From IMG/VR virus record IMGVR_UViG_3300008259_005066, positions 1 through 64,000 of that record: a stretch of 64,000 nucleotides of DNA. One strand, written 5' to 3'. The notes under the pieces were generated by a model. That model was not told the DNA's origin. It worked only from the letters and a program-made list of their open reading frames with translations, and ran no database searches. The position numbers were made by a program, and so were the translations under genes. Each line of letters starts with the position of its first letter. The first letter of the stretch is position 1. This document shows positions 10,200-47,784 of this stretch, one piece after another.

Positions 10200-10895
10200 T
10201 TATTTATCGCGTATGAGTTTGACTGTTTTCCTTGTGATACGAGGTAACAACAGGCTCAGCATAGTAACTATGCCCATGCCATCATGATCAATGAAAAAGT
10301 TTTCACTGACATAATAGTGTTTTTGATCCTGTTCAATAAACTGCGCCAGACCCGGTCCCAATCGTATGCTTTCTTGCTTGATCAAGAAGTCCACTAGATT
10401 GTGGCGTTGAGGTTCATCCAGACGCTGTGCCCGGAAATAGGACCGGAACTCGTGCTGGCTGTTCTGGATCCTCAGCGTGTCTCTGGGGCGATCCAACACA
10501 CTGCGTTTCACGCTCACTGCATGCACATAAGGCAACTGTTCTATGGTGCGGATCAGGCCCAGATCGCTGGTGTAAACATATCCCCAATCACCTGACACTG
10601 TGATTTTGTAATTCTGTTGTGCCTGCAGGAAATCCAACATGGCATGGCAATTGGCTCGCTGTTCTTCGGTGATCTGACCCCGGCGGCTGGCCCAAGATCC
10701 ACCAAAGTTCGGACTGCGTTGCCGCCAGTCATTGCGATGGTTGATCATGCGATCGATGCGGTCATGCTCCATCTCTCGCACACAACTCATCTCGTCCATG
10801 CGGAAAGCCAAACAATACTCATAGAGATCGAAATAAGATCTATCTCTACGATGTATTTTAATGGTCAAAGGGCTAGTCGACTTGTATGATACCAT
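10200..10895 (-). CDS. Hypothetical protein
   Basis: Start moved to MVSYKS to limit overlap with clpA; start is uncertain. Confidence 0.6.
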   Translation of the reverse strand: MVSYKSTSPLTIKIHRRDRSYFDLYEYCLAFRMDEMSCVREMEHDRIDRMINHRNDWRQRSPNFGGSWASRRGQITEEQRANCHAMLDFLQAQQNYKITVSGDWGYVYTSDLGLIRTIEQLPYVHAVSVKRSVLDRPRDTLRIQNSQHEFRSYFRAQRLDEPQRHNLVDFLIKQESIRLGPGLAQFIEQDQKHYYVSENFFIDHDGMGIVTMLSLLLPRITRKTVKLIRDK

Positions 10896-13082: not shown

Positions 13083-13512
13083 TCTGTTCCTTGGCTCGAT
13101 CATGCATGGTTATTCCTTGTAGATGATCCAACTCGTGTTGGAAACATCTGGCTTCAAGTCCCGAAAGATCTGCTTCGACCCAATCACCGAAATGATTTTG
13201 GTATCTCGCCCTGATCGCATCGGGTCTTTTAAGTATACATGAGTCTCCGGGAAAACTCAAGCATCCTTCCTCAAATTCGGCAAACACATCACTGCTAGAC
13301 ACTATGACAGGATTAAAGCACGCCCGATCGTGTCCGTCAACGCTCATCACAAACAATCGTTTGGAAAGGCCAATCTGTGGAGCTGCCAATCCTATGCCAT
13401 TTTGCAAGCGCATCAACCCAAACATCTGGGTGGCCAGATCATGATTGCGGACAGGATACTGGAAATCTACAGGCTTGGCTTGATTGTGTAAAACCCTGCG
13501 TGTCAACTTCAT
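13066..13512 (-). CDS. def: Peptide deformylase
   Basis: GIGLAAPQIG, EGCLS and QHELDHL motifs; ATG follows TAAATA. Confidence 0.95.
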   Translation of the reverse strand: MKLTRRVLHNQAKPVDFQYPVRNHDLATQMFGLMRLQNGIGLAAPQIGLSKRLFVMSVDGHDRACFNPVIVSSSDVFAEFEEGCLSFPGDSCILKRPDAIRARYQNHFGDWVEADLSGLEARCFQHELDHLQGITMHDRAKEQNATES

Positions 13513-29218: not shown

Positions 29219-29947
29219 TTACAAACCGTAAGTAGCCTTTGTAGCGTTGTAGTTTTGTAGGATTTCTGCAGAGTCTAAAACACGATTATAGACAAATACC
29301 TGTCCTAGATCGCCCACATACTGGTAACTGCCAGTTGGGCTTCCACCTGTGAATGCGCTTCGTCCTACCCAGAGTTCTTGAGCATTTGAAATAGTGCCCG
29401 ATGGAAATGATCCTGCGGCTGTGGCGATCTGGGCGCCATTCACATACAAGGTTTGAGTTGCAGTGCTACGGGTATACATGACAAGATACCAGGCGCTGTT
29501 GTTGTAGTTGGTCAATGGGCTGTTGATGTTTCTAGTTGATGCACCGCTCTGTGCGATGTCACCTATGATCTGTCCGCCGTTGAGCCAGATGCGATAGTTC
29601 CAAGGCCACCCTCCTGTTTCCTCTTTGCTAAGTATCATCTTGATGCCGCCGGCTGATGATCGGAACCAAGCACCCACTGAAAATTCTTCTGCAGATAGAC
29701 TTTGATTGGTGTCCACATACTCAGTGGTGCCATCAAAATTAAAGTAGGTTGAATTGAAAGCCGGTGCACCAATCAAGGTGGTTGAATAAGCATTTGGGCT
29801 CAAGTCAGTCCAGGTCGTGCCTGAACCTGGATAGCTGGCCGGATCAGCCGCGTTCAAATACAGTTGCAGATTCAAGGTCACAATGCTGGGAGCGGGAGTC
29901 GCGGCCTGTTGCACATTGTTGGCCACCATCTGCATGATGCCGCTCAT
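29219..29947 (-). CDS. LamG/concanavalin-A-like lectin domain protein
   Basis: LYLNAADPASYPGSGTTWTDLS...VYNRVLDSAEILQNYNA. Confidence 0.85.
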   Translation of the reverse strand: MSGIMQMVANNVQQAATPAPSIVTLNLQLYLNAADPASYPGSGTTWTDLSPNAYSTTLIGAPAFNSTYFNFDGTTEYVDTNQSLSAEEFSVGAWFRSSAGGIKMILSKEETGGWPWNYRIWLNGGQIIGDIAQSGASTRNINSPLTNYNNSAWYLVMYTRSTATQTLYVNGAQIATAAGSFPSGTISNAQELWVGRSAFTGGSPTGSYQYVGDLGQVFVYNRVLDSAEILQNYNATKATYGL

Positions 29948-32900
29948 TAGCTGACTCCGGTGCCGTTGATGAACCAGGTGTCTGTGGCCACCTTCATGAT
30001 TGTGGCCATACCAAATGTGGCCACTGTCCTGTTGCCTGATGTGGCATTACCAGCCAGGTAAAGAGTTACTCCAGATCCTTGGGCCACTGTGATATTGCCT
30101 GTGCCTTGATTGATCACTGTGATGGCTGCACCTGTCGCAAACCCTTGGCTGGCGTTGTTGGCTATTGTGAGGATGTAGTCGGTGCTTTGGGTGGAGTAGA
30201 AGTGCTTGCCAGCGTCTGTGGTAGCAATGGTTGCGTTAGCTGTGAATGCGACCTGCGGTATGTCTCTATAACCTAGGGCAAAGCCGGCTGTGTTGCCGGT
30301 GATGTTGCCTGCGGTGATAATGTTTCCACCTGAGATGTTACCAGTTACACTGATAGCATTACCATAGGTGATTTCTTTTGATGTGGTATTATAGAACACG
30401 ACTTCAGCCACATTGGCCACATCATTGCGTATGGGTGCCACTGTGAATGTATTGGCAGTGGTTTGATTAAGTATGCCACCGGTGGCATTGATGATGATTG
30501 AATTGTTGCCTTGATTGGTGTCACCAGCACCGTAGCCCAAGGCTACCGCATATTCGCCTTGTGTGATTCGACCAGCTCCGTCACCTACGGCCACTGCTGA
30601 GACGCCTTGTGTGTCGGTACCAGCCATTTCACCAATGGCCACTGCTGAACCACCACTGCTCTGCCCGGCAAACCCAGCTTCTTGACCAATGGCCACTGCG
30701 TAGGCACCTTGTGCGTTGCCGGCTTCTCGACCAATGGCCACTGCTCCAATGCCTTGTGAGGTTATGGCAGCTTGGAAGCCCATGGCCACTGCATAGTTGC
30801 CTTGTGATGTTTCACCAGCTTGTTGTCCAATGGCCACTGCATCACCTGCGGTGTCTCGTATCACTGCACCGTTGGTGAGTGTGATCTTGCCAGTGTTGAC
30901 GTTGCCGCCTGTGATGTTACCAGCAACACTTATGACATTGCCATAGGTAATTTCCTTGCTGGTAGTGTTGTAGAACATGACCTCAGCCACATTGGCCACA
31001 TCATTGCGTATGGGTGCTACATAGAAACTATTTGTTTGTGCGGGCACGCCTCCCATATTTGTGCCTGTGGCATTTAGGAAGATGGTGTTATCAGGTTGTG
31101 CTACACCAACTCCATTATAACCAGCGTACTTACCAATTGCTATGGCATCGGCACCCTGGAGTTGAGCACCAGCAAAAGCACCAATAGCCACAGCACCATC
31201 TTCTTGCCCAGTTTGGCCTGCGGCATATCCAATTGCTATAGCATTATTACTTTGATTGGATTGACCAGCCTGCCAACCAACGGCCACGGTTAATCCACCT
31301 TGGTTGGTTTGACCTGCATTATATCCGATGGCCACAGTTCCAAATCCAGGTGTGTAAGTAAATGTTTGGTGAACATTTTCTCCTATTGCTATATTTTGTG
31401 GTCCATTGGCATTAGTGATATTACCAATATTAGCCCAGTCAGTGCTAGGCAAGTTTGTGAGTTGGCTGCCGTTGCCAATGAAATAGTTGCCGGTGATGTT
31501 GCCACCCGCATTGATGTTGCCATTTACTCCAACGCCACCCAAGACCTTGAGAGCTCCTGTGTTGGGATCCACACTGACAGTTTGATCCGATACTATGACT
31601 TCGCCACCGTCGGCGTTGAGATACAAGTTGCCTGAGGGTTCTATCTTGATGTCTACACCAGAACCGCCTGATGTAGCGATCAGTGCTCCGGTGCCAGGAT
31701 AGTTACCATACAATGCCAAAGTGCCACTGACGCTGAAACTGTTGCTGATATCAACGTGTTGGTTGGTAGGATCCCATTCCATGATGGCATTGCCACCCAG
31801 GAAAGAGATACCGGGCACGCTCAGGACAGCAGTTTGTAGATTGCCAGGCACTGTGCTGATATTGGCAGCGCCGATGTTGATGTTACCGGAAAGATTGATA
31901 TCTTTCCATCTTCTTGTGGTGGTGTTGCCCAGGCTGTAAGTGGCATTGGCCGAGGGTATGATATTGCCAGCCCATCCTGCTTCGCCATAGGCTGCCACAT
32001 TGGCGTTGGCATAACTGGACACGCCGGTGAGCAAGCTACCATTGCCAACGAAATAGTTGGCCGTGATATTGGCACCAGTGATGTTACCGCCCACATTGAT
32101 GTTGCCATTTACTCCAACGCCACCCAAGACTTTGAGTGCTCCTGTGTTGGTATCCACACTGGCGGTTTGATCAGAAACAATCACTTCCCCGCCATCGGCG
32201 TTGAGATAGAGATTGCCTGAGGGTTCAATGGTTATGTCTACCCCAGACCCGCCGCTTGTGGTAATTACCGCTCCATCGCCGGGATAGTTGCCGTATAATT
32301 GCAGTGTGCCAGAAATAGAAAAACTGTTGGAAACATCCACGTGTTGATTTACTGCGTCCCATTCCATGATGGCTGATCCGCCTTGGAACGCGATTCCGGG
32401 CACCTGAAGGATGTAGGGTTGGCTGTTGCCTGCGACTGCTCGGAGATTGGCGCCACCTAGATAAAAATTGCCTGTGGCACGATTGTAGGTAAAGTTGGCG
32501 TTGCCGCCAAAGTTGCCGGCATCATTGAACTGTATGTAGGTGTTGCTGCCGCCAGGCGTTTTGCCTATGGGTTGACCGTTGGCGTAGGTGATCGGTAGAT
32601 TGGTGACCCAGGAGTTGGAAGTGGAATTGTAAAGGAACGTGGCTATGTTGTCCGAAGCACCCACAGTGATGCCCGATCCATTGGCCTGGATGGCATTGGC
32701 CGCTGTGTTGGCCAACTGTATGGTCTTGGTGTCAGTGACGATGTTGCCAATCTGTATGGTATCGCCTTCCACAGTGAGATTGCCCTGGATCACAGCATCG
32801 CCGGGCACTGTGAGCGTGCCAGTGATGGTTATGTTGCCGGTTTCTACCGACGCCGTATACAAACCGCGCCACTGCATGGTGGCAGAGCCCAGGAACCAGG

Positions 32901-33147
32901 TGTTGTTGGCGCCGGGAATGGTGTTGTTGTTGAGGCGCACATTGCCCACACCATTGGGGCTCAGGGCTAGATCTTGATTGACCTGGAGCGTGGAGATGAC
33001 GTTGCCTGCGATACGGACATTGGATCCTACAGGACCGGCTGTCCAGATCTGATTGAAATTGTCGTTGGTTTTGTCAAACGCTGTGCGTAAATTGTCACCC
33101 TGCCCGTCATTGGGCTGTGGGCCAATATTGATAATATCTTGGGCCAT
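29947..33147 (-). CDS. Tail fibre / receptor-binding protein with YadA-like repeats
   Basis: gp9/gp10-like N-terminus (NIGPQPNDGQGDNLRTAF), G/N-rich shaft, 14-aa AVAIG..AG repeats and internal duplications. Confidence 0.85.
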   Translation of the reverse strand: MAQDIINIGPQPNDGQGDNLRTAFDKTNDNFNQIWTAGPVGSNVRIAGNVISTLQVNQDLALSPNGVGNVRLNNNTIPGANNTWFLGSATMQWRGLYTASVETGNITITGTLTVPGDAVIQGNLTVEGDTIQIGNIVTDTKTIQLANTAANAIQANGSGITVGASDNIATFLYNSTSNSWVTNLPITYANGQPIGKTPGGSNTYIQFNDAGNFGGNANFTYNRATGNFYLGGANLRAVAGNSQPYILQVPGIAFQGGSAIMEWDAVNQHVDVSNSFSISGTLQLYGNYPGDGAVITTSGGSGVDITIEPSGNLYLNADGGEVIVSDQTASVDTNTGALKVLGGVGVNGNINVGGNITGANITANYFVGNGSLLTGVSSYANANVAAYGEAGWAGNIIPSANATYSLGNTTTRRWKDINLSGNINIGAANISTVPGNLQTAVLSVPGISFLGGNAIMEWDPTNQHVDISNSFSVSGTLALYGNYPGTGALIATSGGSGVDIKIEPSGNLYLNADGGEVIVSDQTVSVDPNTGALKVLGGVGVNGNINAGGNITGNYFIGNGSQLTNLPSTDWANIGNITNANGPQNIAIGENVHQTFTYTPGFGTVAIGYNAGQTNQGGLTVAVGWQAGQSNQSNNAIAIGYAAGQTGQEDGAVAIGAFAGAQLQGADAIAIGKYAGYNGVGVAQPDNTIFLNATGTNMGGVPAQTNSFYVAPIRNDVANVAEVMFYNTTSKEITYGNVISVAGNITGGNVNTGKITLTNGAVIRDTAGDAVAIGQQAGETSQGNYAVAMGFQAAITSQGIGAVAIGREAGNAQGAYAVAIGQEAGFAGQSSGGSAVAIGEMAGTDTQGVSAVAVGDGAGRITQGEYAVALGYGAGDTNQGNNSIIINATGGILNQTTANTFTVAPIRNDVANVAEVVFYNTTSKEITYGNAISVTGNISGGNIITAGNITGNTAGFALGYRDIPQVAFTANATIATTDAGKHFYSTQSTDYILTIANNASQGFATGAAITVINQGTGNITVAQGSGVTLYLAGNATSGNRTVATFGMATIMKVATDTWFINGTGVS
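30358..31020. repeat. Two 84-bp copies closing the YadA-like blocks (30937-31020 and 30358-30441)
   Basis: VAPIRNDVANVAEV(M/V)FYNTTSKEITYGN occurs twice. Confidence 0.9.
31489..32412. repeat. Two 339-bp copies of a tail-fibre module (32074-32412 and 31489-31827)
   Basis: Both encode ...VPG.....GG.AIMEWD..NQHVD.SNSFS.SGTL.LYGNYPG...IEPSGNLYLNADGGEVIVSDQT...GALKVLGGVGVNGNIN.GGNITG. Confidence 0.9.
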
Positions 33148-33196
33148 CTACCTGTTCCTTTGGTATATTTACCGGAACAGGCAGTTTGGATCTATG

Positions 33197-33520
33197 CTAG
33201 TAAGGTGAGAAACTTGATCCGCAACCGCAGGTGGTCTGTGCGTTGGGGTTTTCTATGCTGAAACTACTGCCCATGATGTCGTCTTTGTAGTCTATTGTAG
33301 CACCTTGCAGGTAGCCCCATGACATGGAATCTACCAAGAGTTTGACACCATTGTAATCAAAATCAAAGTCGTCTTCGTTTTGTGCTTCATCAAATGTGAA
33401 ACCATACTGCATGCCCGAGCAACCACCGCCCTGCACGAACACACGCAGTTTGAGATTGGCATTGTTTTCCTCGGCGAATATGTCTTGTATCTTGCTCTGT
33501 GCTGATTCCGTTAACTGCAT
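33197..33520 (-). CDS. erpA: A-type Fe-S cluster carrier (ErpA/IscA)
   Basis: [17 protein letters not shown] and [14 protein letters not shown]. Confidence 0.9.
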
Positions 33521-33523
33521 AGT

Positions 33524-34102
33524 TTATTCCTCGATGATACCAATGCGCTCGTTGATGATGTCCCAGTTGATGATGCGCCACACATTGTTGAGATAGGCTT
33601 CTTTGTCACTTTGGTAATCCAGGGCCCAGGCATGTTCCCACCAGTCGATCAGCAAGGCTATGTCAGTGCGAACAGCATGATTTTTGATGGTCTTGATTTC
33701 GCCTGCAGTGGATAGATATACCCATCCCGATCCCTGTATCTTCATGGCGGTTTCTTTCACTGAGTCCTTGAATGTATCAAAATCTTCAAACTTTTGCTCG
33801 ATGAGTTTGAGGCTGGATCCTCTAGGGCGATTGCCGCTCTTGGGAGCACGAAACTGCGGGAAGAACATGTTGTGCAAGAAACTGCCAGCACGATTGAAAT
33901 CTGCGTTGCCTTCACCTGCGTTGTAGCGTTTGGCGTAGCCACGGGCCAGATGCTCAAAATGATAATCCAGGGTTTTTTCGCTCATCACCGGATCTAGATC
34001 TTTCATCCCGTAGGGCAAAGGAGTGGTTTCCAGTTTGGCAGGACGAGTAGATGCTTCTACTAGATTGATAAATTCTGCTATTGCGGCGGCTGTTTCCATC
34101 AT
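33524..34102 (-). CDS. sod: Fe/Mn superoxide dismutase
   Basis: YHFEH, HNMFF, GSGW and DWWEHAW metal-ligand motifs. Confidence 0.9.
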   Translation of the reverse strand: MMETAAAIAEFINLVEASTRPAKLETTPLPYGMKDLDPVMSEKTLDYHFEHLARGYAKRYNAGEGNADFNRAGSFLHNMFFPQFRAPKSGNRPRGSSLKLIEQKFEDFDTFKDSVKETAMKIQGSGWVYLSTAGEIKTIKNHAVRTDIALLIDWWEHAWALDYQSDKEAYLNNVWRIINWDIINERIGIIEE

Positions 34103-34530
34103 GTTTGCCTCACTACCAACCCACCAGAGTTGTTGAAATACACCTGACCAATGGCCACTCCGCCTGCGGCGGCTGTGGCATCGTTACTGTAAGGTCCCAT
34201 AAAACTAAATCCGCTACCTGTTTCTATGTTGGCCACGGTGTTGGCCACGCTGTCCAGTGCGCCCTGCACATTGGCTAGCACTGTGGGCCAGTCTCCTGGA
34301 TTGGTCTGGGAGTAACTCACTGAATTTGCAGTAACATTACCACCGCCGAATACCACTGCAACACCGTTGGCATATCGATAGCCATTTGTGAGTATGTTTG
34401 CGGCGGCAACATTTCCGCCGATGGTTATGCTCTGGAACGTGACCTCACCGAGATCGGCGTCTCCTATCGAGCCTTCCAGTGGATTTTTAATAGAACGGGG
34501 TTTACCGTCGTTGCCTTTTACGAATCCCAT
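34099..34530 (-). CDS. Hypothetical, probably structural, protein
   Basis: G/A/N-rich fibre-like sequence behind TAAATA. Confidence 0.6.
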   Translation of the reverse strand: MGFVKGNDGKPRSIKNPLEGSIGDADLGEVTFQSITIGGNVAAANILTNGYRYANGVAVVFGGGNVTANSVSYSQTNPGDWPTVLANVQGALDSVANTVANIETGSGFSFMGPYSNDATAAAGGVAIGQVYFNNSGGLVVRQT

Positions 34531-34550
34531 AAAGCATTCCTTTATGGTAT

Positions 34551-34655
34551 TTAGCGCCTGCGTGTGATGCGACCTTTGGTTAGATCGTAGAGGCTGAACT
34601 CCATCTCTACCCTATCGCCCAGCAGGATCTTGATGTTGTGCATGCGCATCTTGCC
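34551..34655 (-). pseudogene. infA: Displaced 3' half of infA (34 codons + stop)
   Basis: Encodes [34 protein letters not shown], identical in protein to 36259-36363; 97/105 nt identical. Confidence 0.95.
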
Positions 34656-34679
34656 TTAAACTAATGTGCATATAGATAT

Positions 34680-35375
34680 TTAGTCTTTTAATGCTTGGGC
34701 ATAACTATCCACCCACAAATCACAGGCTGCATCATGAGCCTCTTTTAGGGGGTGCAGACCTGGGTCGGTGACTGTAAATCCCTTTGACCTGCTCCAATCC
34801 AAGAAATTCAAACCCTGAAAATTTTGCATGCAAGGCCTAGTAAAATCTTGCAAGGTCCTGATGTAGTCTGGAGCATGCCATTGAGTGTCCCAAAGTTCAT
34901 AATCCATGTAAGTCTGAATATTGGATATTTTTTTATGTTTTAAAAATGTTTGCACCATGTAGATTGTTTGCAGACTCCGCCATTTGTCCCATAAGGTAGA
35001 ATGTCCAGGATATTTGTTATAAAATTCCAGTATTTTTTCTGCTTCTTCTATTCCTACCATTGGTGCCAGTTTGCTAGGAACACAGGTTAAACCCAACGTG
35101 GTCCATTGTTCCAATCCTGGAACATAAAAATCCCATCGAGCTCCCCAGGTCCAATTGATCACTGCTACCACATCATCTGATGGATTGTTAGAAAAATATG
35201 TCAGTATTTGTCGAGCGATATTTTCGTTACCGCATCCTGGAACAGCAGTGGTCTCATATGTGACTCCTAGTTTTTTTGCCGATAGGCCGATCCAGGAGTT
35301 ATGTCCGTCGTCGTTGTCATCAAGTTCACTGCCAAATACGAAACTATCCCCGAACCCCACAATTTTGTTTTTCAT
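34680..35375 (-). CDS. SGNH/GDSL-like hydrolase
   Basis: GFGDSF, PGCGN and a C-terminal HP; visibly AT-richer than its flanks. Confidence 0.7.
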   Translation of the reverse strand: MKNKIVGFGDSFVFGSELDDNDDGHNSWIGLSAKKLGVTYETTAVPGCGNENIARQILTYFSNNPSDDVVAVINWTWGARWDFYVPGLEQWTTLGLTCVPSKLAPMVGIEEAEKILEFYNKYPGHSTLWDKWRSLQTIYMVQTFLKHKKISNIQTYMDYELWDTQWHAPDYIRTLQDFTRPCMQNFQGLNFLDWSRSKGFTVTDPGLHPLKEAHDAACDLWVDSYAQALKD

Positions 35376-35388
35376 GATTAGTTTTATA

Positions 35389-36258
35389 TCATCCTTTTAC
35401 AATATCGTATAGATAATCTGCCCACAATTCATGCCCTCGTTCAGTGGGATGTTTGGTGGCTTTTTTATAGTTTAGATCACTGTCCATCAACCAATCTATA
35501 GCCAGCGAAGCTGAACTCATGAGACCATATAAATCTCGTCGCCAGGACCGATGCAACGATCGTTTTTGTAAATATTCTTCCAACGGAACAAATCCTAACT
35601 GACTGACAATTCTAGCGTCCTGTGGATACAATGATTTATCTTCTTGTGCTTCTGCTAAGATATCAACCCAGGTTTTTTTCAGCATATACGGAAACTTACT
35701 GATGTTTGATGGATAGGACACTGTAAAGTTTCTTGCCAAGATCCATTGCACATCAGGATGCTCAAGCATGGCCGCATGAAAAGTTGCCAGCATATTGTAT
35801 TCATAGTCTGTTAGGAATCCATCCAATGAATTTTCAGTTGGCGCTGGGTCTAACCACCATGGATCCCCTGTGATTTCTCTCATTAATTCTGTGAGCGTGA
35901 TTACCACAGTAATTTTACGATATTTTGATTTGATCTGATCGATATACCCAAACGCCATTCTGTGTATTTCCGAATTGGTAGCACCACACTTGGCCAACAT
36001 GAGAAAGTCTCTGTTTAGTTTGTCTGCCAGCAGTCTGCCAAAAACATGCGAAGTCCTGTGAGTGATATCATCGAAGATTCCTTTGTCAAAATCGATCTGA
36101 CCCAGACTATCTCCCCAGGTCCAACTGTCTCCCACAGTGATCAAGAGATCTTGTTTTCCGGTCACAAATTCGTAGTACCAGGATCTTTCCGGTGCTTCAC
36201 CGTAAGTAAATTTGGTATTGTGTGTGTCCAAACTGGGCACAATGTAGAAAGACAACAT
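35389..36258 (-). CDS. SGNH/GDSL-like hydrolase
   Basis: VGDSWTWG, CGATN and KHPTERGH. Confidence 0.65.
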   Translation of the reverse strand: MLSFYIVPSLDTHNTKFTYGEAPERSWYYEFVTGKQDLLITVGDSWTWGDSLGQIDFDKGIFDDITHRTSHVFGRLLADKLNRDFLMLAKCGATNSEIHRMAFGYIDQIKSKYRKITVVITLTELMREITGDPWWLDPAPTENSLDGFLTDYEYNMLATFHAAMLEHPDVQWILARNFTVSYPSNISKFPYMLKKTWVDILAEAQEDKSLYPQDARIVSQLGFVPLEEYLQKRSLHRSWRRDLYGLMSSASLAIDWLMDSDLNYKKATKHPTERGHELWADYLYDIVKG

Positions 36259-36477
36259 TTATCTCCTACGGGTGATGCGCCCTTTGGTTAGGTCGTAGAG
36301 ACTGAACTCCATCTCTACCCTATCTCCCAGCAGGATCTTGATGTTGTGCATGCGCATCTTGCCCGAAATGATGCCCATCACAGGATTTTCGTGCCCGTCT
36401 ATTTTTACCCGGAACATGGCATTGGGTAGCACGTCAACCACAGTGCCTTCCATTTTTACGCCTTCTTCTTTAGCCAA
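36259..36477 (-). CDS. infA: Translation initiation factor IF-1
   Basis: [15 protein letters not shown]...[18 protein letters not shown]...YDLTKGRIT. Confidence 0.97.
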
Positions 36478-36772
36478 GATTGAATGTGATCCGTTTTAGA
36501 CGATCCCAGCGGAAACTGCGCCAGGCGTTTTGATTGGTATCCCAGACCACGCAGGTGTCAGGATGAGGTTTTTTTCGTGTGCTTTCATTGGTGGAATATT
36601 TAGCCCCTGCGCTCTCGGCCAGTGTGCATTCCATGCGCCTGGGGCTACCATCGGCCTTGACGAATTCCACAGTGACCACTCGTTCCTGTAGCAGGCCACG
36701 CAACCACTTTTTTAGTTGTTCTCGCTCTTCGGCATCCACTTGATCGTATTCCCAAAGTCCTTGTTCTATCAT
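36470..36772 (-). CDS. WYL_2/Sm-like SH3-fold protein
   Basis: [19 protein letters not shown]...VWD....WRSFRWD. Confidence 0.65.
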
Positions 36773-36987
36773 CGTTGCTCCGGTAAAGTGCGGGCTGACC
36801 AACCTGTCAAAAACAACATGCGGTCCTGCTCGGTGTAAAATTTGAAATCCATGTAGTTGGCATCCAGTTCAGTGACATAACGATCGCCGGGAAGTCCAAA
36901 CACTTCGATCACGCTCTCCAAGAATCCGTCCCAACTCAGTATGGTATCTCCGGCTTGCCATTCTACTCTTGCTGGATATAGGATCAT
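36769..36987 (-). CDS. Hypothetical protein
   Basis: ATGA-coupled ORF. Confidence 0.6.
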   Translation of the reverse strand: MILYPARVEWQAGDTILSWDGFLESVIEVFGLPGDRYVTELDANYMDFKFYTEQDRMLFLTGWSARTLPEQR

Positions 36988-37073
36988 GACAAAAATATGT
37001 AAAGCGCGGCCAAGGCCAAGGGCACGACCACACAGAACAACACATAAGCGATCAACGGTCCTGGATTAGGCAT
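36984..37073 (-). CDS. 29-aa membrane peptide (missing from the ORF track)
   Basis: MPNPGPLIAYVLFCVVVPLALAALYIFLS*; coupled at both ends. Confidence 0.5.
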   Translation of the reverse strand: MPNPGPLIAYVLFCVVVPLALAALYIFLS

Positions 37074-37474
37074 TATCGTCTCATGTGAGCGATGGCTTCG
37101 GCTTCTTCGTCTGAAAAGATAGGAACTGCATTAGATTTGTGCATGGTACCTATGCCCTTGATCTTGGTGCCAGTGTAGACCTTGTCCGGCGCTTTCACTG
37201 CCGGGGTAGAATCCACACCACCATTGAGGCTGGGGATATAAGGAGTCTCGCGTCCGGGTGGCGGACCGTAGGATGGAAATTTTTTGCTCACAGTCACAGA
37301 AACTTTTTTACCGGAAAAATTAGGAGCCAGTTTGGCCCATTCCAGTTGTCGTTGCTCCCACTCGGCTTTGAGATCACGGGCTCGGCGGGCCGCATCAGCA
37401 GATGCCCACCGGCGGCGTTTGCTTTTTACTTTGCCAGTGGTGGTCAACCAAGGGCCTTCCAAGTGCATGGTCAT
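37073..37474 (-). CDS. Hypothetical phage protein
   Basis: YTGTKIKGIGTMHKSNAVPIF motif; GGAG RBS; directly behind a promoter. Confidence 0.7.
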   Translation of the reverse strand: MTMHLEGPWLTTTGKVKSKRRRWASADAARRARDLKAEWEQRQLEWAKLAPNFSGKKVSVTVSKKFPSYGPPPGRETPYIPSLNGGVDSTPAVKAPDKVYTGTKIKGIGTMHKSNAVPIFSDEEAEAIAHMRR

Positions 37475-37503
37475 TGATGACTCCAAAATGTTATCATTGT
37501 ATT

Positions 37504-37532
37504 ATTATAATACCTTTTGGATTATTGGTCAA
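37504..37532 (-). promoter_or_regulatory. Sigma70-type promoter
   Basis: TTGACC-17-TATAAT. Confidence 0.75.
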
Positions 37533-38928
37533 CCTGCTGAAAAATAGGCTCTAACCAAGGAAAAACTCGTTGCCAATTGGTTGCTCTACGCCGATCGAGT
37601 TCGGTTAAAAATTCTCGGAGCTTTATGATTTCCTCTGTGTCAAATCCTTTGCTGGCGCTTTCTTGAGCAATGCCTTGCAGATATTTTTTGATATTGATCT
37701 GCTCCGCATCATTCTCGGGCATGATCTGGATAGCTCTATTAAAATCATCCACGAAAACATCGCCTAAAATATCAACATGCATGTGCAACGGTGATTCTGC
37801 ACTGTTCATGTAATGAGATACATGGCGTATCTTTCTCCATTGATTGATGCGCTCAATAAGATCAGGCAGAGTCTTGATAGTGAGAGGAGTCAGTGTGCTA
37901 CCTACTATTAATCTAATCCAAGATTGATCAAGCAGGTATCGGAAATTTTTTTCCCAAATGTCTAGTTTGAGAGGAAAACGTGCATATTCTTGTTCAGGTC
38001 CCCAGCAATCGAGACTGGCAGTTACCACAAAAGTTTTGAGATGTTGTTTGTCAATGAGATTTTTAATTTTGCTTACCACCGCAGACACTCGAGCCGGAGT
38101 AGCATTGAGATTGGTAAAAATCTGGAACTCTAGTTCCGGCATTGGGTTGTGATCAAAAAAATCCAGACAATCATCGAGATCTTTTTGGAACAAAGGCTCG
38201 CCGCCAAGGAAATTAAAGTTGGTAAGGCTATGTCCGTGTTGCGATATCCACTCAAACATCTTGGTTTTATTTTTTGCGATATCAGGACTTTTCTTAAATG
38301 TATTCGAGATGATCAAACCATTTTTTTCAAACTTACCATGTTTTTTGTTTTCAGCATCCCATAAACTGCTGAAATGCGGACCGCAATACACACATTTCAA
38401 ATTACAGACATTGTCAAAGTAAACTTCTAATATACGAGGAGTGACTTGGATAGCAACAAGATCATCATCCAGTTCTGGCGGAGCAAACATTCCAGGCATA
38501 TCAAGATTGGTTATCCTGTCACTTTGTCCTCCGGCCGTTTCTATATCTCGACAATAACCACAACCTTTTTCGGGCCAAAATCCCTGGAGCATGCGAGATC
38601 TATCGTCCAACTTGCTAGGAGTGTTGTGAAAATCAAATACATCGATATCAAACTTGTGATGATTGGTGCGATGACAACTGGCAGTATTTTCTGTCGTAAG
38701 ATAAACTGTGCTCCAGTTCCATTTGAGTTGACAAGCTGTGGCAGTTTTTATGGGAAATGTTTTGTGTTGATATCGAGGCTGATTTCTGTAACTACCTATC
38801 ACATAACCATGAACTTGTTGACACTCATCCTGTATCCACTGTGGTAGAGATAAAAAATCTTGTTCATGGTCGCAGTCCGGCCATGATGAATCTTTTATGC
38901 TTAGATAAAATTCCTGCCAAGGCGTCAT
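37522..38928 (-). CDS. Radical SAM protein
   Basis: CNLKCVYC and FLGGEP; AT-rich. Confidence 0.9.
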   Translation of the reverse strand: MTPWQEFYLSIKDSSWPDCDHEQDFLSLPQWIQDECQQVHGYVIGSYRNQPRYQHKTFPIKTATACQLKWNWSTVYLTTENTASCHRTNHHKFDIDVFDFHNTPSKLDDRSRMLQGFWPEKGCGYCRDIETAGGQSDRITNLDMPGMFAPPELDDDLVAIQVTPRILEVYFDNVCNLKCVYCGPHFSSLWDAENKKHGKFEKNGLIISNTFKKSPDIAKNKTKMFEWISQHGHSLTNFNFLGGEPLFQKDLDDCLDFFDHNPMPELEFQIFTNLNATPARVSAVVSKIKNLIDKQHLKTFVVTASLDCWGPEQEYARFPLKLDIWEKNFRYLLDQSWIRLIVGSTLTPLTIKTLPDLIERINQWRKIRHVSHYMNSAESPLHMHVDILGDVFVDDFNRAIQIMPENDAEQINIKKYLQGIAQESASKGFDTEEIIKLREFLTELDRRRATNWQRVFPWLEPIFQQVDQ

Positions 38929-39692
38929 TCTTGATCTTTGAATTTACACACCGGAATAGCCTGCATCTTGTGTAGATTGCGAGCACGGATCTCTCGATAT
39001 CGTTTTAGATTTTTCTTGAGCTCTTTGTTATCGCACTGTATTTCGCCCTGGTCCATGCGCATGGCCACTTCAAGGTCGGCGTAGGTCATGCCTAACTGTT
39101 GTTCGTCAGTGCGACCATCTGCCCATAAACCATCAGTGGGAGCGGCATCAATGATATCTTGCAACACGCCCAGTTCACGACCCATGGCCCACACTTCAGT
39201 TTTCATGCAGTCTCCAATGGGACTGATATCCACACCACCGTCGCCATACTTGGTAAAGAACCCCACTCCAAAGTCTTCAACCTTGTTGCCTGTGCCCACA
39301 ACGATGCCGGAGTTGGCTTGCGCTAATTGATACAAGGTCATCATGCGTAATCTAGCACGACTGTTGGCATAGGCCAGTTCATCGCTGAACACACGGGTAG
39401 CATGTTCAAATTGTTCAAAGGCGGATGTGAGATCGATAACAAAGTGATCCACCAGTTCAAACGTGTCTTTCAGCCACTGTCCATGCCGCATGCTGAGATC
39501 ATGTGTGTGTTCGCTTTGCCGGATGGGCATGCTCACAGCAATGACATACAGTCCTGCACGAGCACACAGCGTGGATACCACGGCCGAATCTATGCCGCCC
39601 GATACACCCACCACCAAGGTATTGATTTTGTGTCTGGTGGCATAACTTTTAATCCACTTTGTAATGTAGTTGATACGTTGTTTTGGTGTCAT
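38925..39692 (-). CDS. nadE: NH3-dependent NAD+ synthetase
   Basis: SGGIDS, NSRARLRM, GTGNKVE, GFFTKYGDG and APTDGLW. Confidence 0.95.
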   Translation of the reverse strand: MTPKQRINYITKWIKSYATRHKINTLVVGVSGGIDSAVVSTLCARAGLYVIAVSMPIRQSEHTHDLSMRHGQWLKDTFELVDHFVIDLTSAFEQFEHATRVFSDELAYANSRARLRMMTLYQLAQANSGIVVGTGNKVEDFGVGFFTKYGDGGVDISPIGDCMKTEVWAMGRELGVLQDIIDAAPTDGLWADGRTDEQQLGMTYADLEVAMRMDQGEIQCDNKELKKNLKRYREIRARNLHKMQAIPVCKFKDQE

Positions 39693-40474: not shown

Positions 40475-41143
40475 CTATTCTCGATTACCAAACAGTTGCA
40501 ACAGGCTCACGAAGATGTTGATGAAGTTGATATATAGGCTCAATGCACCAAACCATTGCATGCGACCTATTTCCTGCTCACTGGCCGACCAGAACATGTC
40601 ACGGATGCGATTCATGTCATAGGCAGTGAGTCCCAGGAATATCAGGATGGTCAATACATTTATGGTCATCTGCAGGGCAGTGGATGCCACGAACATACCG
40701 ATCACGCTGGCGATGATCAAACCGATCACACCTGCGAACAGGAACGGACCCCAACCCGAGATGTCTCGTTTGGTGAAATATCCCCAACCCGCTAACGCAG
40801 TGAAACTCACAGTGGTGCCAACCAAGGCCTGCACTATGGATCCGGTGGTATACACAGCGAACAACAGGCTGAGGCTCAGACCCATGGCTGCCGCGAAGGC
40901 AAAGAACCACAGTTTGATACCTTGCTCAGTGAGACTGTCACCTTTCCACATGAGAAATAAACTCATCAGCAAAGGTGCGAATATGATCACGTAGCCTAGG
41001 ATACCTGAGAACAGCACAGGAACCAGGCCCATGCCAGCAACCAAGGCTGCGAATACCAAGGTAGCAAACACTCCCCCGGCCATGCGACCCAAGACTCCGG
41101 CCACTGCGGTGTTGAGACTCTGTGCGGCTGATAATGTAGACAT
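40475..41143 (-). CDS. Bax inhibitor-1/YccA family membrane protein
   Basis: About 7 TM segments; TKRDISGWG, GLTAYD and ALSLYINFINIF. Confidence 0.9.
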   Translation of the reverse strand: MSTLSAAQSLNTAVAGVLGRMAGGVFATLVFAALVAGMGLVPVLFSGILGYVIIFAPLLMSLFLMWKGDSLTEQGIKLWFFAFAAAMGLSLSLLFAVYTTGSIVQALVGTTVSFTALAGWGYFTKRDISGWGPFLFAGVIGLIIASVIGMFVASTALQMTINVLTILIFLGLTAYDMNRIRDMFWSASEQEIGRMQWFGALSLYINFINIFVSLLQLFGNRE

Positions 41144-41154
41144 AGTGATGCTCC

Positions 41155-41343
41155 TTATTTGGTAGCTGCCATGGCCTCTTTTTCAGCCGTGATTTCTTTG
41201 CGGCGTTCCTTGATGGCCTTTGACATTTCTTGCAGGGCTTTGCGGGCCCGGGCCGCGGCGGCTTTGACACCTTTGCCTGCGAACTTGTCGTTCTCGGCGA
41301 TGTAGGTTTCAAAAGCGGTTTTGATTGCGTCGTGATTGCTCAT
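41155..41343 (-). CDS. Histone H1-like (Hc1-type) basic protein
   Basis: KGVKAAAARARKALQEMSKAIKERRKEI. Confidence 0.7.
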   Translation of the reverse strand: MSNHDAIKTAFETYIAENDKFAGKGVKAAAARARKALQEMSKAIKERRKEITAEKEAMAATK

Positions 41344-41344
41344 A

Positions 41345-41515
41345 CTATTCTCCTTGTGTTTTTGCTTGTTGGCGCAAGGCATTCTGCCTGCGCACGTTGT
41401 CGTGCATCTGTTGCTTGACTGCATCGGGGTCTTGGGCCGTGGCCAGTGATCTACTGAGTGACCGATATTCGTCCAGCAATATCTTGATCTGTTCGGTAAA
41501 TTGTGCGTTGTCCAT
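41345..41515 (-). CDS. 56-aa hypothetical protein
   Basis: AAGGAG RBS; first gene behind a promoter. Confidence 0.6.
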   Translation of the reverse strand: MDNAQFTEQIKILLDEYRSLSRSLATAQDPDAVKQQMHDNVRRQNALRQQAKTQGE

Positions 41516-41535
41516 TTCAACTCCTTGCTTGCGAT

Positions 41536-47046: not shown

Positions 47047-47064
47047 GGTCAGTGGGCACTAACC
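47047..47064. promoter_or_regulatory. 18-bp palindromic box, copy 3
   Basis: GGTCAGTGGGCACTAACC. Confidence 0.7.
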
Positions 47065-47784
47065 TAGGGTCTGCCCAAAATGTTGGTATGCGTGTGGGTT
47101 GAGTTCGAATCCAACGAATCTACGTCCCAACCGGAGAGCGGCACGGCCCGTGGAGAACGATCCTCCAAAGGGATCCAGCACCAAGTCTCCTAGATTGGAA
47201 CTGTAATCGATGAACTTTTCAATGAACGATTCGGCCAACTGATTGTTGTTGCGGATCTCGCCCGTCTTGTATTCTCTAGGCAAGGTCTGCACACTGAGTC
47301 GGTCGTTGTATGATTCTGTGGTATCAGCAAAACGACAATGTGTGTTGAAGATCCTCTTCTGTTGGCCTCGTTCTCGCTTGGACCAGAACAGCACATGGTA
47401 ATGGCTCGAGACCCATTTCTTTTTGGTGTATACTCCAAAGGTGTATTGGGCGATGATATGATTGATTTCTTCGAGTTGTGTGTAGTGCAAGGCGTTGAGA
47501 ATATGATGTAGATTTGAATAGCCAGACACGATATACAAGGATCCACCGGGCCGCAACACTCGCTCACATTCCTGGATCCAGGCATGACACCATTGGGCAT
47601 ATTGATCTCTGGGCACATCCACATAACCGGCGATGACCTTGCTGTCGTCTCGATTGTAGTGCGTGTCTAGTTGATCACCGGCTATGCCATAGGGCGGATC
47701 AGTGAATATGAGATCTACTGTGCCATCGGCCACGTGTTCCTGCATGCCCACTACACAGTCCTGCTGGTAGATGCTATGTGTCAC
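47059..47784 (-). CDS. N6-adenine/N4-cytosine DNA methyltransferase (beta class)
   Basis: FTDPPY catalytic motif N-terminal; VLDPFGGS SAM-binding motif C-terminal. Confidence 0.9.
   Translation of the reverse strand: MTHSIYQQDCVVGMQEHVADGTVDLIFTDPPYGIAGDQLDTHYNRDDSKVIAGYVDVPRDQYAQWCHAWIQECERVLRPGGSLYIVSGYSNLHHILNALHYTQLEEINHIIAQYTFGVYTKKKWVSSHYHVLFWSKRERGQQKRIFNTHCRFADTTESYNDRLSVQTLPREYKTGEIRNNNQLAESFIEKFIDYSSNLGDLVLDPFGGSFSTGRAALRLGRRFVGFELNPHAYQHFGQTLG

What the first reader, a model, noticed from the sequence alone, without database searches (positions are those of the whole stretch)
34551..36363. Cassette inserted into infA that supplies a synonymously recoded 3' end
Seen: the last 105 nt of infA occur twice, flanking 1.6 kb of AT-richer DNA with two SGNH-like genes. 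The copies differ at 8 nt in 7 codons, all synonymous, and the first 38 nt are identical. The orphan copy ends in the TAAATA promoter of the next gene. Established: integrative elements often restore a target gene by carrying a replacement 3' end. Inference: the cassette came from a related phage by recombination within infA, with no integrase nearby, so a conserved translation gene serves as a landing pad. The orphan also has TAAATA and AAGG before an ATG and might yield a 32-aa IF-1 peptide.
Basis: partly seen in the sequence, partly recalled or inferred. Interest (0 to 1): 0.75.

Follow-up and report, generated by a model that had tools for sequence, protein, structure and literature searches.

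The report
Recombination scar beside phage infA
An uncultured freshwater giant phage carries a leftover second copy of the end of its translation-factor gene infA; it is a scar from a sloppy recombination between two related phages that carried different optional genes at the same spot, so it is a clear example of a known process and not a new kind of mobile element.

Summary
The last 105 nt of infA, plus 2 nt after the stop, occur twice (36257-36363 and 34549-34655, minus strand). The copies differ at 8 sites, all synonymous. They flank two genes that structure prediction places in the SGNH hydrolase fold.

In 57 distinct relatives the infA-to-SOD junction is a variable cargo slot: 35 are empty and 22 hold cargo such as radical SAM, SGNH, glycosyltransferase, ATP-grasp or p143 genes. 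None of them has a duplicated infA end. Both parental layouts exist in nature: infA-SGNH1-SGNH2-SOD (L114) and infA-p143-SOD (L124, L121-123, L015, L107, and a roughly 96%-identical strain in run X15).

In the window, SGNH2 is followed by the usual TAAATA-N5-ATG start of an SOD gene. About 8 SOD codons (MHISLRQD) remain. They are fused at a 6-8 nt microhomology, (GG)CAAGAT, to infA codon 39.

So the orphan marks an illegitimate joint between two phage lineages, not an attachment site. The working 3' end (last codon AGA) matches the phages carrying SGNH cargo. The orphan's end (CGC) matches the phages carrying p143.

The joint is not an assembly artefact: at least 11 sequencing runs hold 98-99% of the region's sampled words. 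Nothing supports the 32-aa peptide.

The parts
36259..36477 (-). Full-length infA (IF1), 72 aa, TTG start. Its stop codon abuts the ATG of SGNH1.
   Evidence: Pfam eIF-1a, E 1.9e-19, 69.5 bits against a cut-off of 30.2. The same gene sits at the same position in 474 viral contigs.
36257..36363 (-). Repeat copy R1: infA codons 39-72, the stop and 2 nt. This is the 3' end in use. Its last codon is AGA, as in relatives that carry SGNH cargo.
   Evidence: The AGA end is shared with L110, L112 and L114. R1 differs from sister strain L110 at 4 of 102 nt, against 12 from p143-type L124.
35389..36258 (-). Cargo gene SGNH1, 289 aa, an SGNH/GDSL-fold hydrolase.
   Evidence: Model pLDDT 95.0. Foldseek PDB hits to carbohydrate esterase family 2 enzymes, acyloxyacyl hydrolase and GDSL lipases, probability 1.00. 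G43-D44-S45 and H270 are invariant. 13 of 33 homologues hit PF00657.
34680..35375 (-). Cargo gene SGNH2, 231 aa, an SGNH/GDSL-fold hydrolase near DUF6071. It is a regular occupant of the infA-to-SOD slot in relatives.
   Evidence: Model pLDDT 90.7. PDB hits to TesA, EstA and GDSL esterases, probability 1.00, TM up to 0.71. G9-D10-S11 and H208 are invariant. It lies in the slot in L087-L096, L112, L114, L117 and L118.
34672..34682 (-). TAAATA overlapping the SGNH2 stop codon, plus a 5-nt spacer. This is the conserved signal that precedes the SOD start codon in relatives.
   Evidence: The same TAAATA-N5-ATG layout occurs at SGNH2-to-SOD and infA-to-SOD junctions across the family.
34648..34671 (-). 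Remnant of the first 8 codons of an SOD gene (MHISLRQD). Its ATG opens a 19-aa ORF (34612-34671) that is out of frame with infA.
   Evidence: Relatives carrying SGNH2 have SOD N-termini MHHTIRQD or MNNSIRQD at exactly this position. The sequence matches those relatives on the left and infA on the right.
34648..34655 (-). Breakpoint microhomology, GGCAAGAT. It reads as SOD codons Arg-Gln-Asp and also as infA codons Gly39-Lys-Met.
   Evidence: L087 and L090 match 7 of 8 nt here and then 4-6 of the next 18. infA R1 matches 8 of 8 and then 18 of 18, but only 16 of the 45 nt upstream.
34549..34655 (-). Repeat copy R2: the orphan infA 3' end (codons 39-72, stop, 2 nt). The mechanical ORF is 34551-34649, 32 aa. 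It ends in TAAATA and a Shine-Dalgarno-like AAAGGAA, the native upstream region of p143.
   Evidence: The last 15 nt plus the 30 nt downstream are identical to the infA-to-p143 junction of L124 and nearly identical to that of L015.
34099..34530 (-). p143, a 143-aa gene of unknown function. In other relatives it is the alternative occupant of the same slot.
   Evidence: The layout infA-p143-SOD occurs in L015, L107 and L121-L124. No Pfam, PHROG or PADLOC hit.
33524..34102 (-). Intact Fe/Mn superoxide dismutase, the conserved downstream flank of the slot. Its N-terminus (MMETAAAIAEF) is of a different type from the remnant.
   Evidence: Pfam Sod_Fe_C, E 1.3e-22. Synteny. N-terminus types compared.
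36470..36802 (-). WYL_2-domain gene, part of the conserved upstream flank.
   Evidence: Pfam PF10902, E 3.5e-14. Synteny.

Best explanation
The locus is a scar of recombination between two related lineages of an uncultured freshwater giant phage. The two lineages carried different optional genes in the same slot, between infA and the SOD gene.

One parent had infA-SGNH1-SGNH2-SOD. The other had infA-p143-SOD. The DNA of the first parent was joined, about 24 nt into its SOD gene, to the middle of the second parent's infA (codon 39). The two sequences share the short string (GG)CAAGAT at that point.

The product keeps a complete infA, whose 3' end is of the SGNH-linked type. It keeps both hydrolase genes and an 8-codon SOD stub. 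It also carries a dead 105-nt infA tail that still brings the native upstream signals of p143, followed by p143, SOD and IscA.

The other end of the exchange was either an ordinary homologous crossover somewhere in the shared flanks, as in homology-facilitated illegitimate recombination, or there was no second crossover because a single unequal crossover joined two co-linear genomes. The data cannot separate these two.

Shown by the data: the repeat, its purely synonymous divergence, the SOD stub, the sequence switch at the microhomology, both parental layouts in relatives, the link between each 3' end type and its downstream cargo, and the presence of the joint in many independent runs.

Inferred: co-infection, the enzymes involved, which lineage was the recipient, and that the orphan has no function of its own.
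For: (1) Slot variability. In 57 distinct relatives, 35 have infA followed directly by SOD. The other 22 carry 0.15-2.7 kb of same-strand cargo from at least 8 families.

(2) SGNH2 homologues (50-82% aa identity) lie in this slot, followed by an intact SOD, in L087-L096, L117 and L118. L114-L116 have infA-SGNH1-SGNH2-SOD in the same order as the window. L112 and L113 have the two genes in swapped order. None has a second infA piece.

(3) infA-p143-SOD occurs in L015, L107 and L121-L124. A 625-nt contig in run X15, about 96% identical to the window, runs from 36856 to 36308 and then from 34592 to 34524. That is a single infA followed by p143.

(4) After the SGNH2 stop the window has TAAATA-N5-ATG and then MHISLRQD. 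Relatives have MHHTIRQD or MNNSIRQD as the SOD start at this spot. Identity switches from SGNH2/SOD-type relatives to infA within GGCAAGAT.

(5) All 8 differences are synonymous, P of 5e-6 to 3e-5 under neutrality. The divergence therefore arose while both copies were working genes in separate genomes.

(6) The last codon is AGA in R1 and in all SGNH-type relatives. It is CGC or CGG in R2 and in all p143-type relatives. The terminal 15 nt of R2 plus 30 nt downstream are identical to L124.

(7) At least 11 runs from many studies (2017-2019) hold 98-99% of the region's sampled words. A Logan contig (34626-36355) carries the SOD-stub/infA joint at the same depth as the flanks. Two IMG/VR contigs (L003, L004) and one JGI metagenome contig (L111) show the same layout.

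(8) No recombinase, integrase or endonuclease lies within about 10 kb.
Against: - The 13 nt between the stub's ATG and GGCAAGAT match SOD starts of relatives only 6-7 of 13, against 4 of 13 for infA. The exact breakpoint, and so the length of the microhomology, rests partly on the peptide-level match and on the fixed TAAATA-N5-ATG position.
- No parent with an identical sequence was found. The closest SGNH-type strain (L110, 94% nt) ends inside SGNH2, so its downstream state is unknown. Scans for the stub followed by an intact SOD found only this phage.
- R2 is not simply L124-like. In its middle part it is closer to R1 and L110, so later gene conversion between the copies, or an unsampled parent, must be assumed.
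- Only one lineage with the scar is known, so selection on the orphan cannot be tested.
Confidence: 0.78

Rival explanations
1. The two hydrolase genes form a mobile cassette that integrates into infA, by a site-specific or Campbell-type event. It carries its own copy of the infA 3' end, so the target gene stays intact and the old end is left as an orphan.
For: Direct repeats flank the cargo. The 3' end in use is of the type linked to SGNH cargo, and the orphan is of the resident p143-linked type. The cargo is AT-richer than the flanks.
Against: No integrase or other recombinase is nearby. In at least 12 relatives the same cargo genes sit between infA and SOD with no repeat. An SOD start stub lies inside the supposed element, next to the repeat. 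The repeat begins exactly where SOD and infA share a microhomology. Low GC is a trait of SGNH2 genes in all relatives. The duplication is seen in one lineage only.
Confidence: 0.07
2. The orphan is kept because it does something. It might yield a 32-aa IF1 C-terminal peptide or the 19-aa stub ORF. It might be needed for p143 expression. Or it might serve as a homology handle that lets the cassette be lost cleanly and regained.
For: The orphan has no frameshift and no non-synonymous change. It retains TAAATA and the Shine-Dalgarno-like sequence of p143. Direct repeats of 105 nt with a 38-nt identical run could support deletion that restores a single infA.
Against: The purely synonymous divergence is already explained by two working ancestors. 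The RNA fold is not unusual (z = -1.06) and no terminator or promoter prediction stands out. No skipped form was seen in the contigs of runs X1, X8 or X13. Residues 41-72 are only part of the IF1 OB fold. There is no second lineage on which to test conservation.
Confidence: 0.07
3. An in-place duplication within one genome was followed by divergence of the copies.
For: Partial tandem duplications do occur in phage genomes.
Against: 8 of 8 differences are synonymous, which is not expected for a dead copy (P at most 3e-5). R2 is followed by p143, not by a second copy of the cargo. The stub SOD N-terminus type differs from the resident SOD. The 3' end types track different relatives.
Confidence: 0.03
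4. The layout is an assembly chimera of two co-occurring strains.
For: Run X15 does contain two strains, one with and one without the cargo. Logan contigs break inside the 38-nt identical stretch.
Against: The SOD-stub/infA joint lies inside a k=31 contig, so it must exist in reads. Depth is even across the flanks and cargo: 8.4, 9.3 and 8.3 in X1, and 9.1, 9.5 and 8.0 in X8. At least 11 runs from different studies hold the sequence. Two IMG/VR contigs and one JGI contig show the same layout. An 8-nt overlap cannot mislead an assembler.
Confidence: 0.02

Closest known systems
Homology-facilitated illegitimate recombination. Described for transformation and conjugation in bacteria (definition in PMC3240628; primary papers by de Vries & Wackernagel 2002 and Prudhomme et al. 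2002, as cited in PMC5361080).
   Same: One side of the incoming DNA is anchored in conserved sequence. The other side is joined at a few bases of microhomology. This adds foreign genes and leaves partial gene fragments.
   Different: Here the partners are two phage genomes, presumably during co-infection, not a cell taking up linear DNA. The homologous crossover cannot be located, so a single unequal crossover is equally possible. The enzymes are unknown.
Orphaned 3' ends at Rhs, CDI and T6SS effector loci (PMC5361080, section 13, and references there).
   Same: An incoming module supplies the 3' part of a gene and its downstream partner genes. The old 3' part is pushed downstream, where it survives as an orphan.
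   Different: In those loci the displaced 3' ends encode different toxins, and the swap changes function. Here the two 3' ends encode the same 34 residues, so only the cargo changes.
Phage genome mosaicism by illegitimate and homeologous recombination (PMC2327257; the Hendrix model, recalled from general knowledge).
   Same: Related phages exchange modules. New joints can fall at random positions, and selection keeps the products that work. Conserved flanking genes favour exchange of what lies between them.
   Different: Most surviving joints lie at gene borders and leave no trace. This one is unusual because the misplaced joint is still readable, both parental layouts are sampled, and no gene was lost.
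Integrative elements that insert into the 3' end of a tRNA, tmRNA or protein gene and carry a replacement 3' end (general knowledge).
   Same: Direct repeats of the gene's 3' end flank the inserted DNA, and the gene stays intact.
   Different: There is no integrase. The repeat edge is a fusion with an SOD stub. The same cargo occurs without repeats in relatives. See the membership test: defining features are not met.
Hyperplastic regions and mobile gene cassettes of T4-like phages, such as the PeSL cassettes
   Same: There is a fixed slot between conserved genes that holds different optional genes in different relatives, and a short conserved promoter-like motif at gene borders.
   Different: No stem-loop or repeated regulatory cassette was found at the borders here. 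The border motif is TAAATA overlapping the stop codon.

Membership tests
Integrative element with target 3'-end replacement | An integrase or other site-specific recombinase is encoded in or next to the element. | tested here: not met
   Pfam, PHROGs and PADLOC scans of all genes from 33.2 to 47.8 kb found none.
Integrative element with target 3'-end replacement | Direct repeats of the target's 3' end form both ends of the element. | tested here: not met
   Repeats are present. However, an 8-codon SOD start stub lies between the cargo and the downstream repeat, so the repeat edge is a gene-to-gene fusion.
Integrative element with target 3'-end replacement | The same unit is found inserted at the same site, with the same repeats, in independent genomes. 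| tested here: not met
   The duplication occurs only in this phage (L003, L004, L111). Relatives with the same cargo have no repeat.
Illegitimate (microhomology) recombination scar, with or without a homologous anchor | A novel joint between non-homologous sequences at a few shared bases. | tested here: met
   The SOD 5' end is joined to infA codon 39 at (GG)CAAGAT. Identity switches cleanly across it.
Illegitimate (microhomology) recombination scar, with or without a homologous anchor | Both parental arrangements exist. | tested here: met
   infA-SGNH1-SGNH2-SOD in L114-L116. infA-p143-SOD in L124, L121-123, L015, L107 and the X15 contig.
Illegitimate (microhomology) recombination scar, with or without a homologous anchor | A second, homologous crossover in the shared flank (needed for the homology-facilitated form). 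| tested here: inconclusive
   The 38 identical nt at the start of the repeat could mark it, but this is not significant (P about 0.08). Flank identities to L110, L124 and the X15 strain do not resolve it.
Bacterial-type IF1 (infA) | A full-length S1-like OB-fold protein that matches the IF1 family above threshold. | tested here: met
   72 aa. PF01176 at 69.5 bits against a cut-off of 30.2, covering profile positions 2-64 of 64. Activity was not tested.
SGNH/GDSL hydrolases (the two cargo genes) | The SGNH fold. | tested here: met
   Models with pLDDT 95.0 and 90.7. The top Foldseek PDB hits are SGNH/GDSL enzymes with probability 1.00.
SGNH/GDSL hydrolases (the two cargo genes) | Block I Gly-Asp-Ser nucleophile and block V His are conserved. 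| tested here: met
   G43-D44-S45, N95 and H270 are invariant in the SGNH1 family. G9-D10-S11, N74 and H208 are invariant in the SGNH2 family. The Asp of the usual DxxH motif is not evident.
SGNH/GDSL hydrolases (the two cargo genes) | A match to the Pfam family above the gathering score. | tested here: not met
   The window proteins score 13-15 bits, E 0.04-0.09. 13 of 33 SGNH1 homologues reach E of 1e-3 or better. The two families are related to each other (hhalign 92.9%).
T4-type late promoter (TATAAATA) at the gene borders | The motif directs transcription through a phage late sigma factor. | not testable with these tools
   The motif is present and conserved at this position across relatives. 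It is strand-biased in the window, 19 against 5. No transcript data were available.

The most novel reading that the evidence does not exclude
The orphan is not inert. The pair of 105-nt repeats may make the SGNH cassette a reversible module that the phage population loses and regains by recombination without harming infA. Alternatively, the orphan or the stub may be translated into a small peptide (32 aa in the IF1 frame, or 19 aa from the SOD start) that acts on host translation.
Probability: 0.05. Interest if true: 0.6.

Novelty: new member of a known kind. Interest (0 to 1): 0.3.

Why it matters
Joints made by illegitimate recombination are thought to drive phage mosaicism, but they are rarely caught. 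Most such products die, and the survivors have joints at gene borders that look seamless.

Here a misplaced joint survived because it duplicated an essential-looking gene end instead of destroying it. The breakpoint, the microhomology and both parental layouts can all be read from environmental data.

The locus also marks the infA-to-SOD junction as a cargo hot spot in a large family of freshwater giant phages. Phage-encoded IF1 itself is already known from huge phages (PMC7162821).

This is a good teaching example and a useful marker for following cassette gain and loss in lake time series. It is not a new mechanism.

Tried and rejected
- Isolated phages. megablast and blastn of 33000-38000 against INPHARED found no relative, only a weak IscA hit.
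- Pfam, PHROGs and PADLOC on the cargo genes and p143 gave nothing above threshold. Sequence searches of the PDB, with single proteins and with profiles, gave nothing. Fold search was needed to settle the SGNH label.
- Looking for the exact SGNH-type parent. An exact-pattern scan of viral contigs for the SGNH2-stop/SOD-stub sequence, and an SGNH1 scan of the metagenome contigs, returned only this same phage. The sister strain L110 ends inside SGNH2.
- Deciding which 3' end is ancestral by distance to the first 40 relatives. They are 20-25% diverged and gave only a weak signal. This was resolved only with the closer loci L110 and L124.
- The idea that the 38 identical nt mark a homologous crossover or a conversion tract. 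It is not significant (P 0.04 by synonymous sites by hand; 0.08 empirically).
- The idea that the stub is just a more diverged stretch of infA. Ungapped identity upstream of the repeat is 16 of 45, which is chance level, while relatives' SGNH2-3'-end to ATG region matches 24 of 32.
- L111 first looked like a diverged second lineage with the scar (82% SGNH1). It is the same phage with a 150-nt in-frame deletion.
- A search for other scars in the 154-nt slot of L019 found nothing.
- RNA folding and promoter or terminator scans of the orphan were unremarkable.
- Excision. No skipped form appears in the contigs of X1, X8 or X13, but contigs drop rare variants, so this says little.
Full report
WHAT IS THERE

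All genes in this part of the window are on the minus strand. In the direction of transcription the order is:
- a radical SAM gene (37522-38928)
- p137
- p72
- a WYL_2-domain gene (36470-36802)
- infA (36259-36477, 72 aa; Pfam eIF-1a, E 1.9e-19)
- SGNH1 (35389-36258), whose ATG abuts the infA stop
- SGNH2 (34680-35375)
- a 107-nt second copy of the infA 3' end (34549-34655)
- p143 (34099-34530)
- Fe/Mn SOD (33524-34102)
- an IscA-like gene (33197-33520)

The window is the first 64 kb of a 209.5-kb IMG/VR virus record rated 60% complete. No isolated phage is similar at the DNA level. The window also has a T4-like clamp loader, an ATP-dependent protease and several radical SAM genes.

CHECKING THE OBSERVATION

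- The repeat is real: 107 nt at 92.5% identity. It is the only high-identity repeat in the whole record.
- The 8 differences fall in codons 51, 59, 62, 66, 69, 70 and 72, and all are synonymous.
- With 22.2 synonymous and 79.8 non-synonymous sites, the chance of 8 out of 8 synonymous changes under no constraint is 5e-6 to 3e-5. The two copies therefore diverged while each was part of a working gene, that is, in two different genomes.
- The 38 identical nt at the start are not remarkable. Comparable pairs of relatives put only 27% of their differences there (P about 0.08).
- The cargo has GC 0.42 against 0.49 for the surroundings. SGNH2 genes are similarly AT-rich in all relatives (0.36-0.46), so this is a trait of the gene family and not proof of recent arrival.
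- Both cargo proteins have the SGNH hydrolase fold. The models have pLDDT 95.0 and 90.7, and the best PDB matches are GDSL/SGNH esterases with probability 1.00. The Gly-Asp-Ser and His motifs are invariant.
- The two proteins are distant relatives of each other (hhalign 92.9%).

THE SLOT IN RELATIVES

infA occurs in 474 viral contigs. The 80 fetched share the synteny p137-(p72)-WYL_2-infA-SOD-IscA.

Among 57 distinct loci that contain both infA and SOD:
- 35 have SOD starting within a few bases of the infA stop.
- 22 carry 0.15-2.7 kb of cargo on the same strand.

The cargo families include radical SAM enzymes (the largest group), the SGNH2 family (7 loci besides the window), DUF6473-like proteins, a metallophosphoesterase, GT2 and GT4 glycosyltransferases, a RimK-type ATP-grasp enzyme and p143.

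The border has a fixed form. The stop codon of the upstream gene overlaps TAAATA, and about 5 nt later comes the ATG of SOD.

Specific layouts seen:
- SGNH2 lies in the slot followed by an intact SOD in L087-L096, L117 and L118.
- L114-L116 have infA-SGNH1-SGNH2-SOD in the window's gene order.
- L112 and L113 have the two genes in the opposite order.
- p143 fills the slot in L015, L107 and L121-L124.

None of these loci has a second piece of infA.

THE JOINT

In the window the SGNH2 stop overlaps TAAATA. Five bases later there is an ATG (34671), and the reading frame gives MHISLRQD. Relatives that carry SGNH2 have SOD genes starting MHHTIRQD, MNNSIRQD or MRSIRQD at exactly that spot.

Up to and including the ATG, the window matches those relatives at 20-24 of 32 nt. 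In the string GGCAAGAT (34648-34655) L087 and L090 match 7 of 8. After it they match 4-6 of 18, which is chance level.

infA behaves in the opposite way: 16 of 45 nt before the string, 8 of 8 in it and 18 of 18 after it.

The string reads Arg-Gln-Asp in the SOD frame and Gly39-Lys-Met in infA. The orphan therefore starts where an SOD 5' end from one genome was joined to the middle of infA from another, at 6-8 shared bases.

One caveat applies. The 13 nt between the ATG and the string match SOD starts only 6-7 of 13. The breakpoint could lie a few bases further upstream.

WHICH END BELONGS TO WHOM

Two closer relatives settle this point.
- L110 is a sister strain, 94% identical over 3.9 kb, with infA-SGNH1-SGNH2. 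Its contig ends inside SGNH2.
- L124 is a p143-type relative, 91% identical upstream.

Differences over 102 nt:

| Pair | Differences |
|---|---|
| R1 and L110 | 4 |
| R2 and L110 | 6 |
| R1 and R2 | 8 |
| R2 and L124 | 9 |
| R1 and L124 | 12 |

The last codon is AGA in R1 and in every SGNH-type relative (L110, L112, L114). It is CGC or CGG in R2 and in every p143-type relative. The last 15 nt of R2 plus the next 30 nt are identical to L124.

So the 3' end now in use came with the SGNH cargo, and the orphan is the end that belongs with p143.

The middle of R2 looks more like R1 and L110 than like L124. That calls for either an unsampled parent or some later conversion between the copies.

IS IT REAL DNA?

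- At least 11 public runs from several studies (lake and freshwater metagenomes, 2017-2019) hold 98-99% of the region's sampled words.
- In runs X1 and X8 the Logan contigs break inside the 38-nt identical stretch, as a k=31 graph must. The contig covering 34626-36355 contains the stub/infA joint. Depth is even: 8.4, 9.3 and 8.3 in X1, and 9.1, 9.5 and 8.0 in X8.
- Two IMG/VR contigs (L003, L004) are 100% identical to the window over 9-11 kb. A JGI contig (L111) is the same phage with a 150-nt in-frame deletion in SGNH1.
- Run X15 (2024) holds a strain about 96% identical that has a single infA followed by p143, at depth about 8. The cassette strain is there at depth 0-4. Empty-site relatives therefore exist at close range and co-occur with this phage.

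HOW IT MOST LIKELY AROSE

Two related phages met in one cell. One had SGNH1-SGNH2 in the slot and the other had p143. A recombination or repair event joined them out of register at the short shared string.

Two routes give the same product. The first is one unequal crossover between co-linear genomes. The second is a patch transfer with one ordinary homologous crossover in the conserved flank, which is the pattern called homology-facilitated illegitimate recombination in bacteria (PMC3240628; PMC5361080).

Because the joint fell inside infA of one parent and at the very start of SOD of the other, nothing essential was lost. The product keeps a whole infA and a whole SOD, and gains both cargo sets. 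Which lineage was the recipient cannot be decided.

The closest analogy is the orphaned 3' ends that build up at Rhs, CDI and T6SS loci when a new module displaces the old one (PMC5361080). The difference is that here the two ends encode the same protein.

Illegitimate and homeologous recombination are the standard explanations for phage mosaicism (PMC2327257). IF1 genes in huge phages are already described (PMC7162821).

THE SMALL ORFS

Nothing points to a 32-aa IF1 peptide. The strongest start signal near the orphan is the SOD start, which opens a 19-aa ORF in another frame. The RNA fold is ordinary (z = -1.06) and no promoter or terminator prediction stands out. With only one lineage carrying the orphan, conservation cannot be tested. 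The orphan does retain the native upstream region of p143, which may be reason enough for it to persist.

VERDICT

The mechanism is wrong: this is not a cassette that targets infA. It is a well-documented instance of a known process in an uncultured phage family. Interest is modest.

Noticed in passing
window minus strand, e.g. 9217, 13523, 19030, 6692, 34682, 34553; relatives L005-L118 at SOD starts: TAAATA, often as ATAAATA, is strand-biased: 19 on the coding strand against 5 on the other. It sits 5-8 nt before the ATG of real ORFs. Across the phage family it overlaps the upstream stop codon and lies 5 nt before the SOD start. It resembles a T4 late promoter. With that spacing the mRNAs would have almost no leader, in a phage family that encodes its own IF1.
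   Followed up: partly
loci L005-L124, between infA and SOD: The infA-to-SOD junction is a cargo hot spot. 22 of 57 distinct relatives carry radical SAM, SGNH, DUF6473-like, metallophosphoesterase, GT2, GT4, RimK ATP-grasp or p143 genes there, always on the same strand.
   Followed up: yes
window 35752-35901 (SGNH1); locus L111: A JGI contig of the same phage, otherwise 99.96-100% identical, lacks 150 nt in frame within SGNH1. This is a strain variant, or a sign that the gene is dispensable.
   Followed up: partly
window 35389-36258 against L110:2542-3411: SGNH1 is only 84% identical between the window and its sister strain, while the flanking genes are 96-99% identical. Either the gene evolves fast or it was exchanged separately.
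   Followed up: no
L112 and L113, 4293-5870: A relative carries the two SGNH genes in swapped order (infA-SGNH2-SGNH1-SOD). The genes in this slot therefore move as single-gene modules.
   Followed up: no
window 37522-38928: The radical SAM gene upstream is a second low-GC island (about 0.40 against 0.49). Related radical SAM genes occupy the infA-to-SOD slot in several relatives.
   Followed up: partly
window about 30400-30650 (1066-aa fibre-like gene, 29947-33147): L004 differs from the window by an indel of about 135 nt in the internal repeat region of the fibre-like gene. The two are otherwise identical.
   Followed up: no
window 38925-39692, 40475-41143, 41155-41520, 47059-47784, 10873-13103: The phage encodes an NAD synthase, a Bax1-I family membrane protein, an Hc1 histone-H1-like protein, a DNA methylase and an ATP-dependent protease split into two ORFs.
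   Followed up: no
run X15, laid on window 33000-38000: Two strains co-occur in one 2024 freshwater sample. An empty-site relative (about 96% identical, infA-p143) is at depth about 8, and the cassette strain is at depth 0-4.
   Followed up: partly
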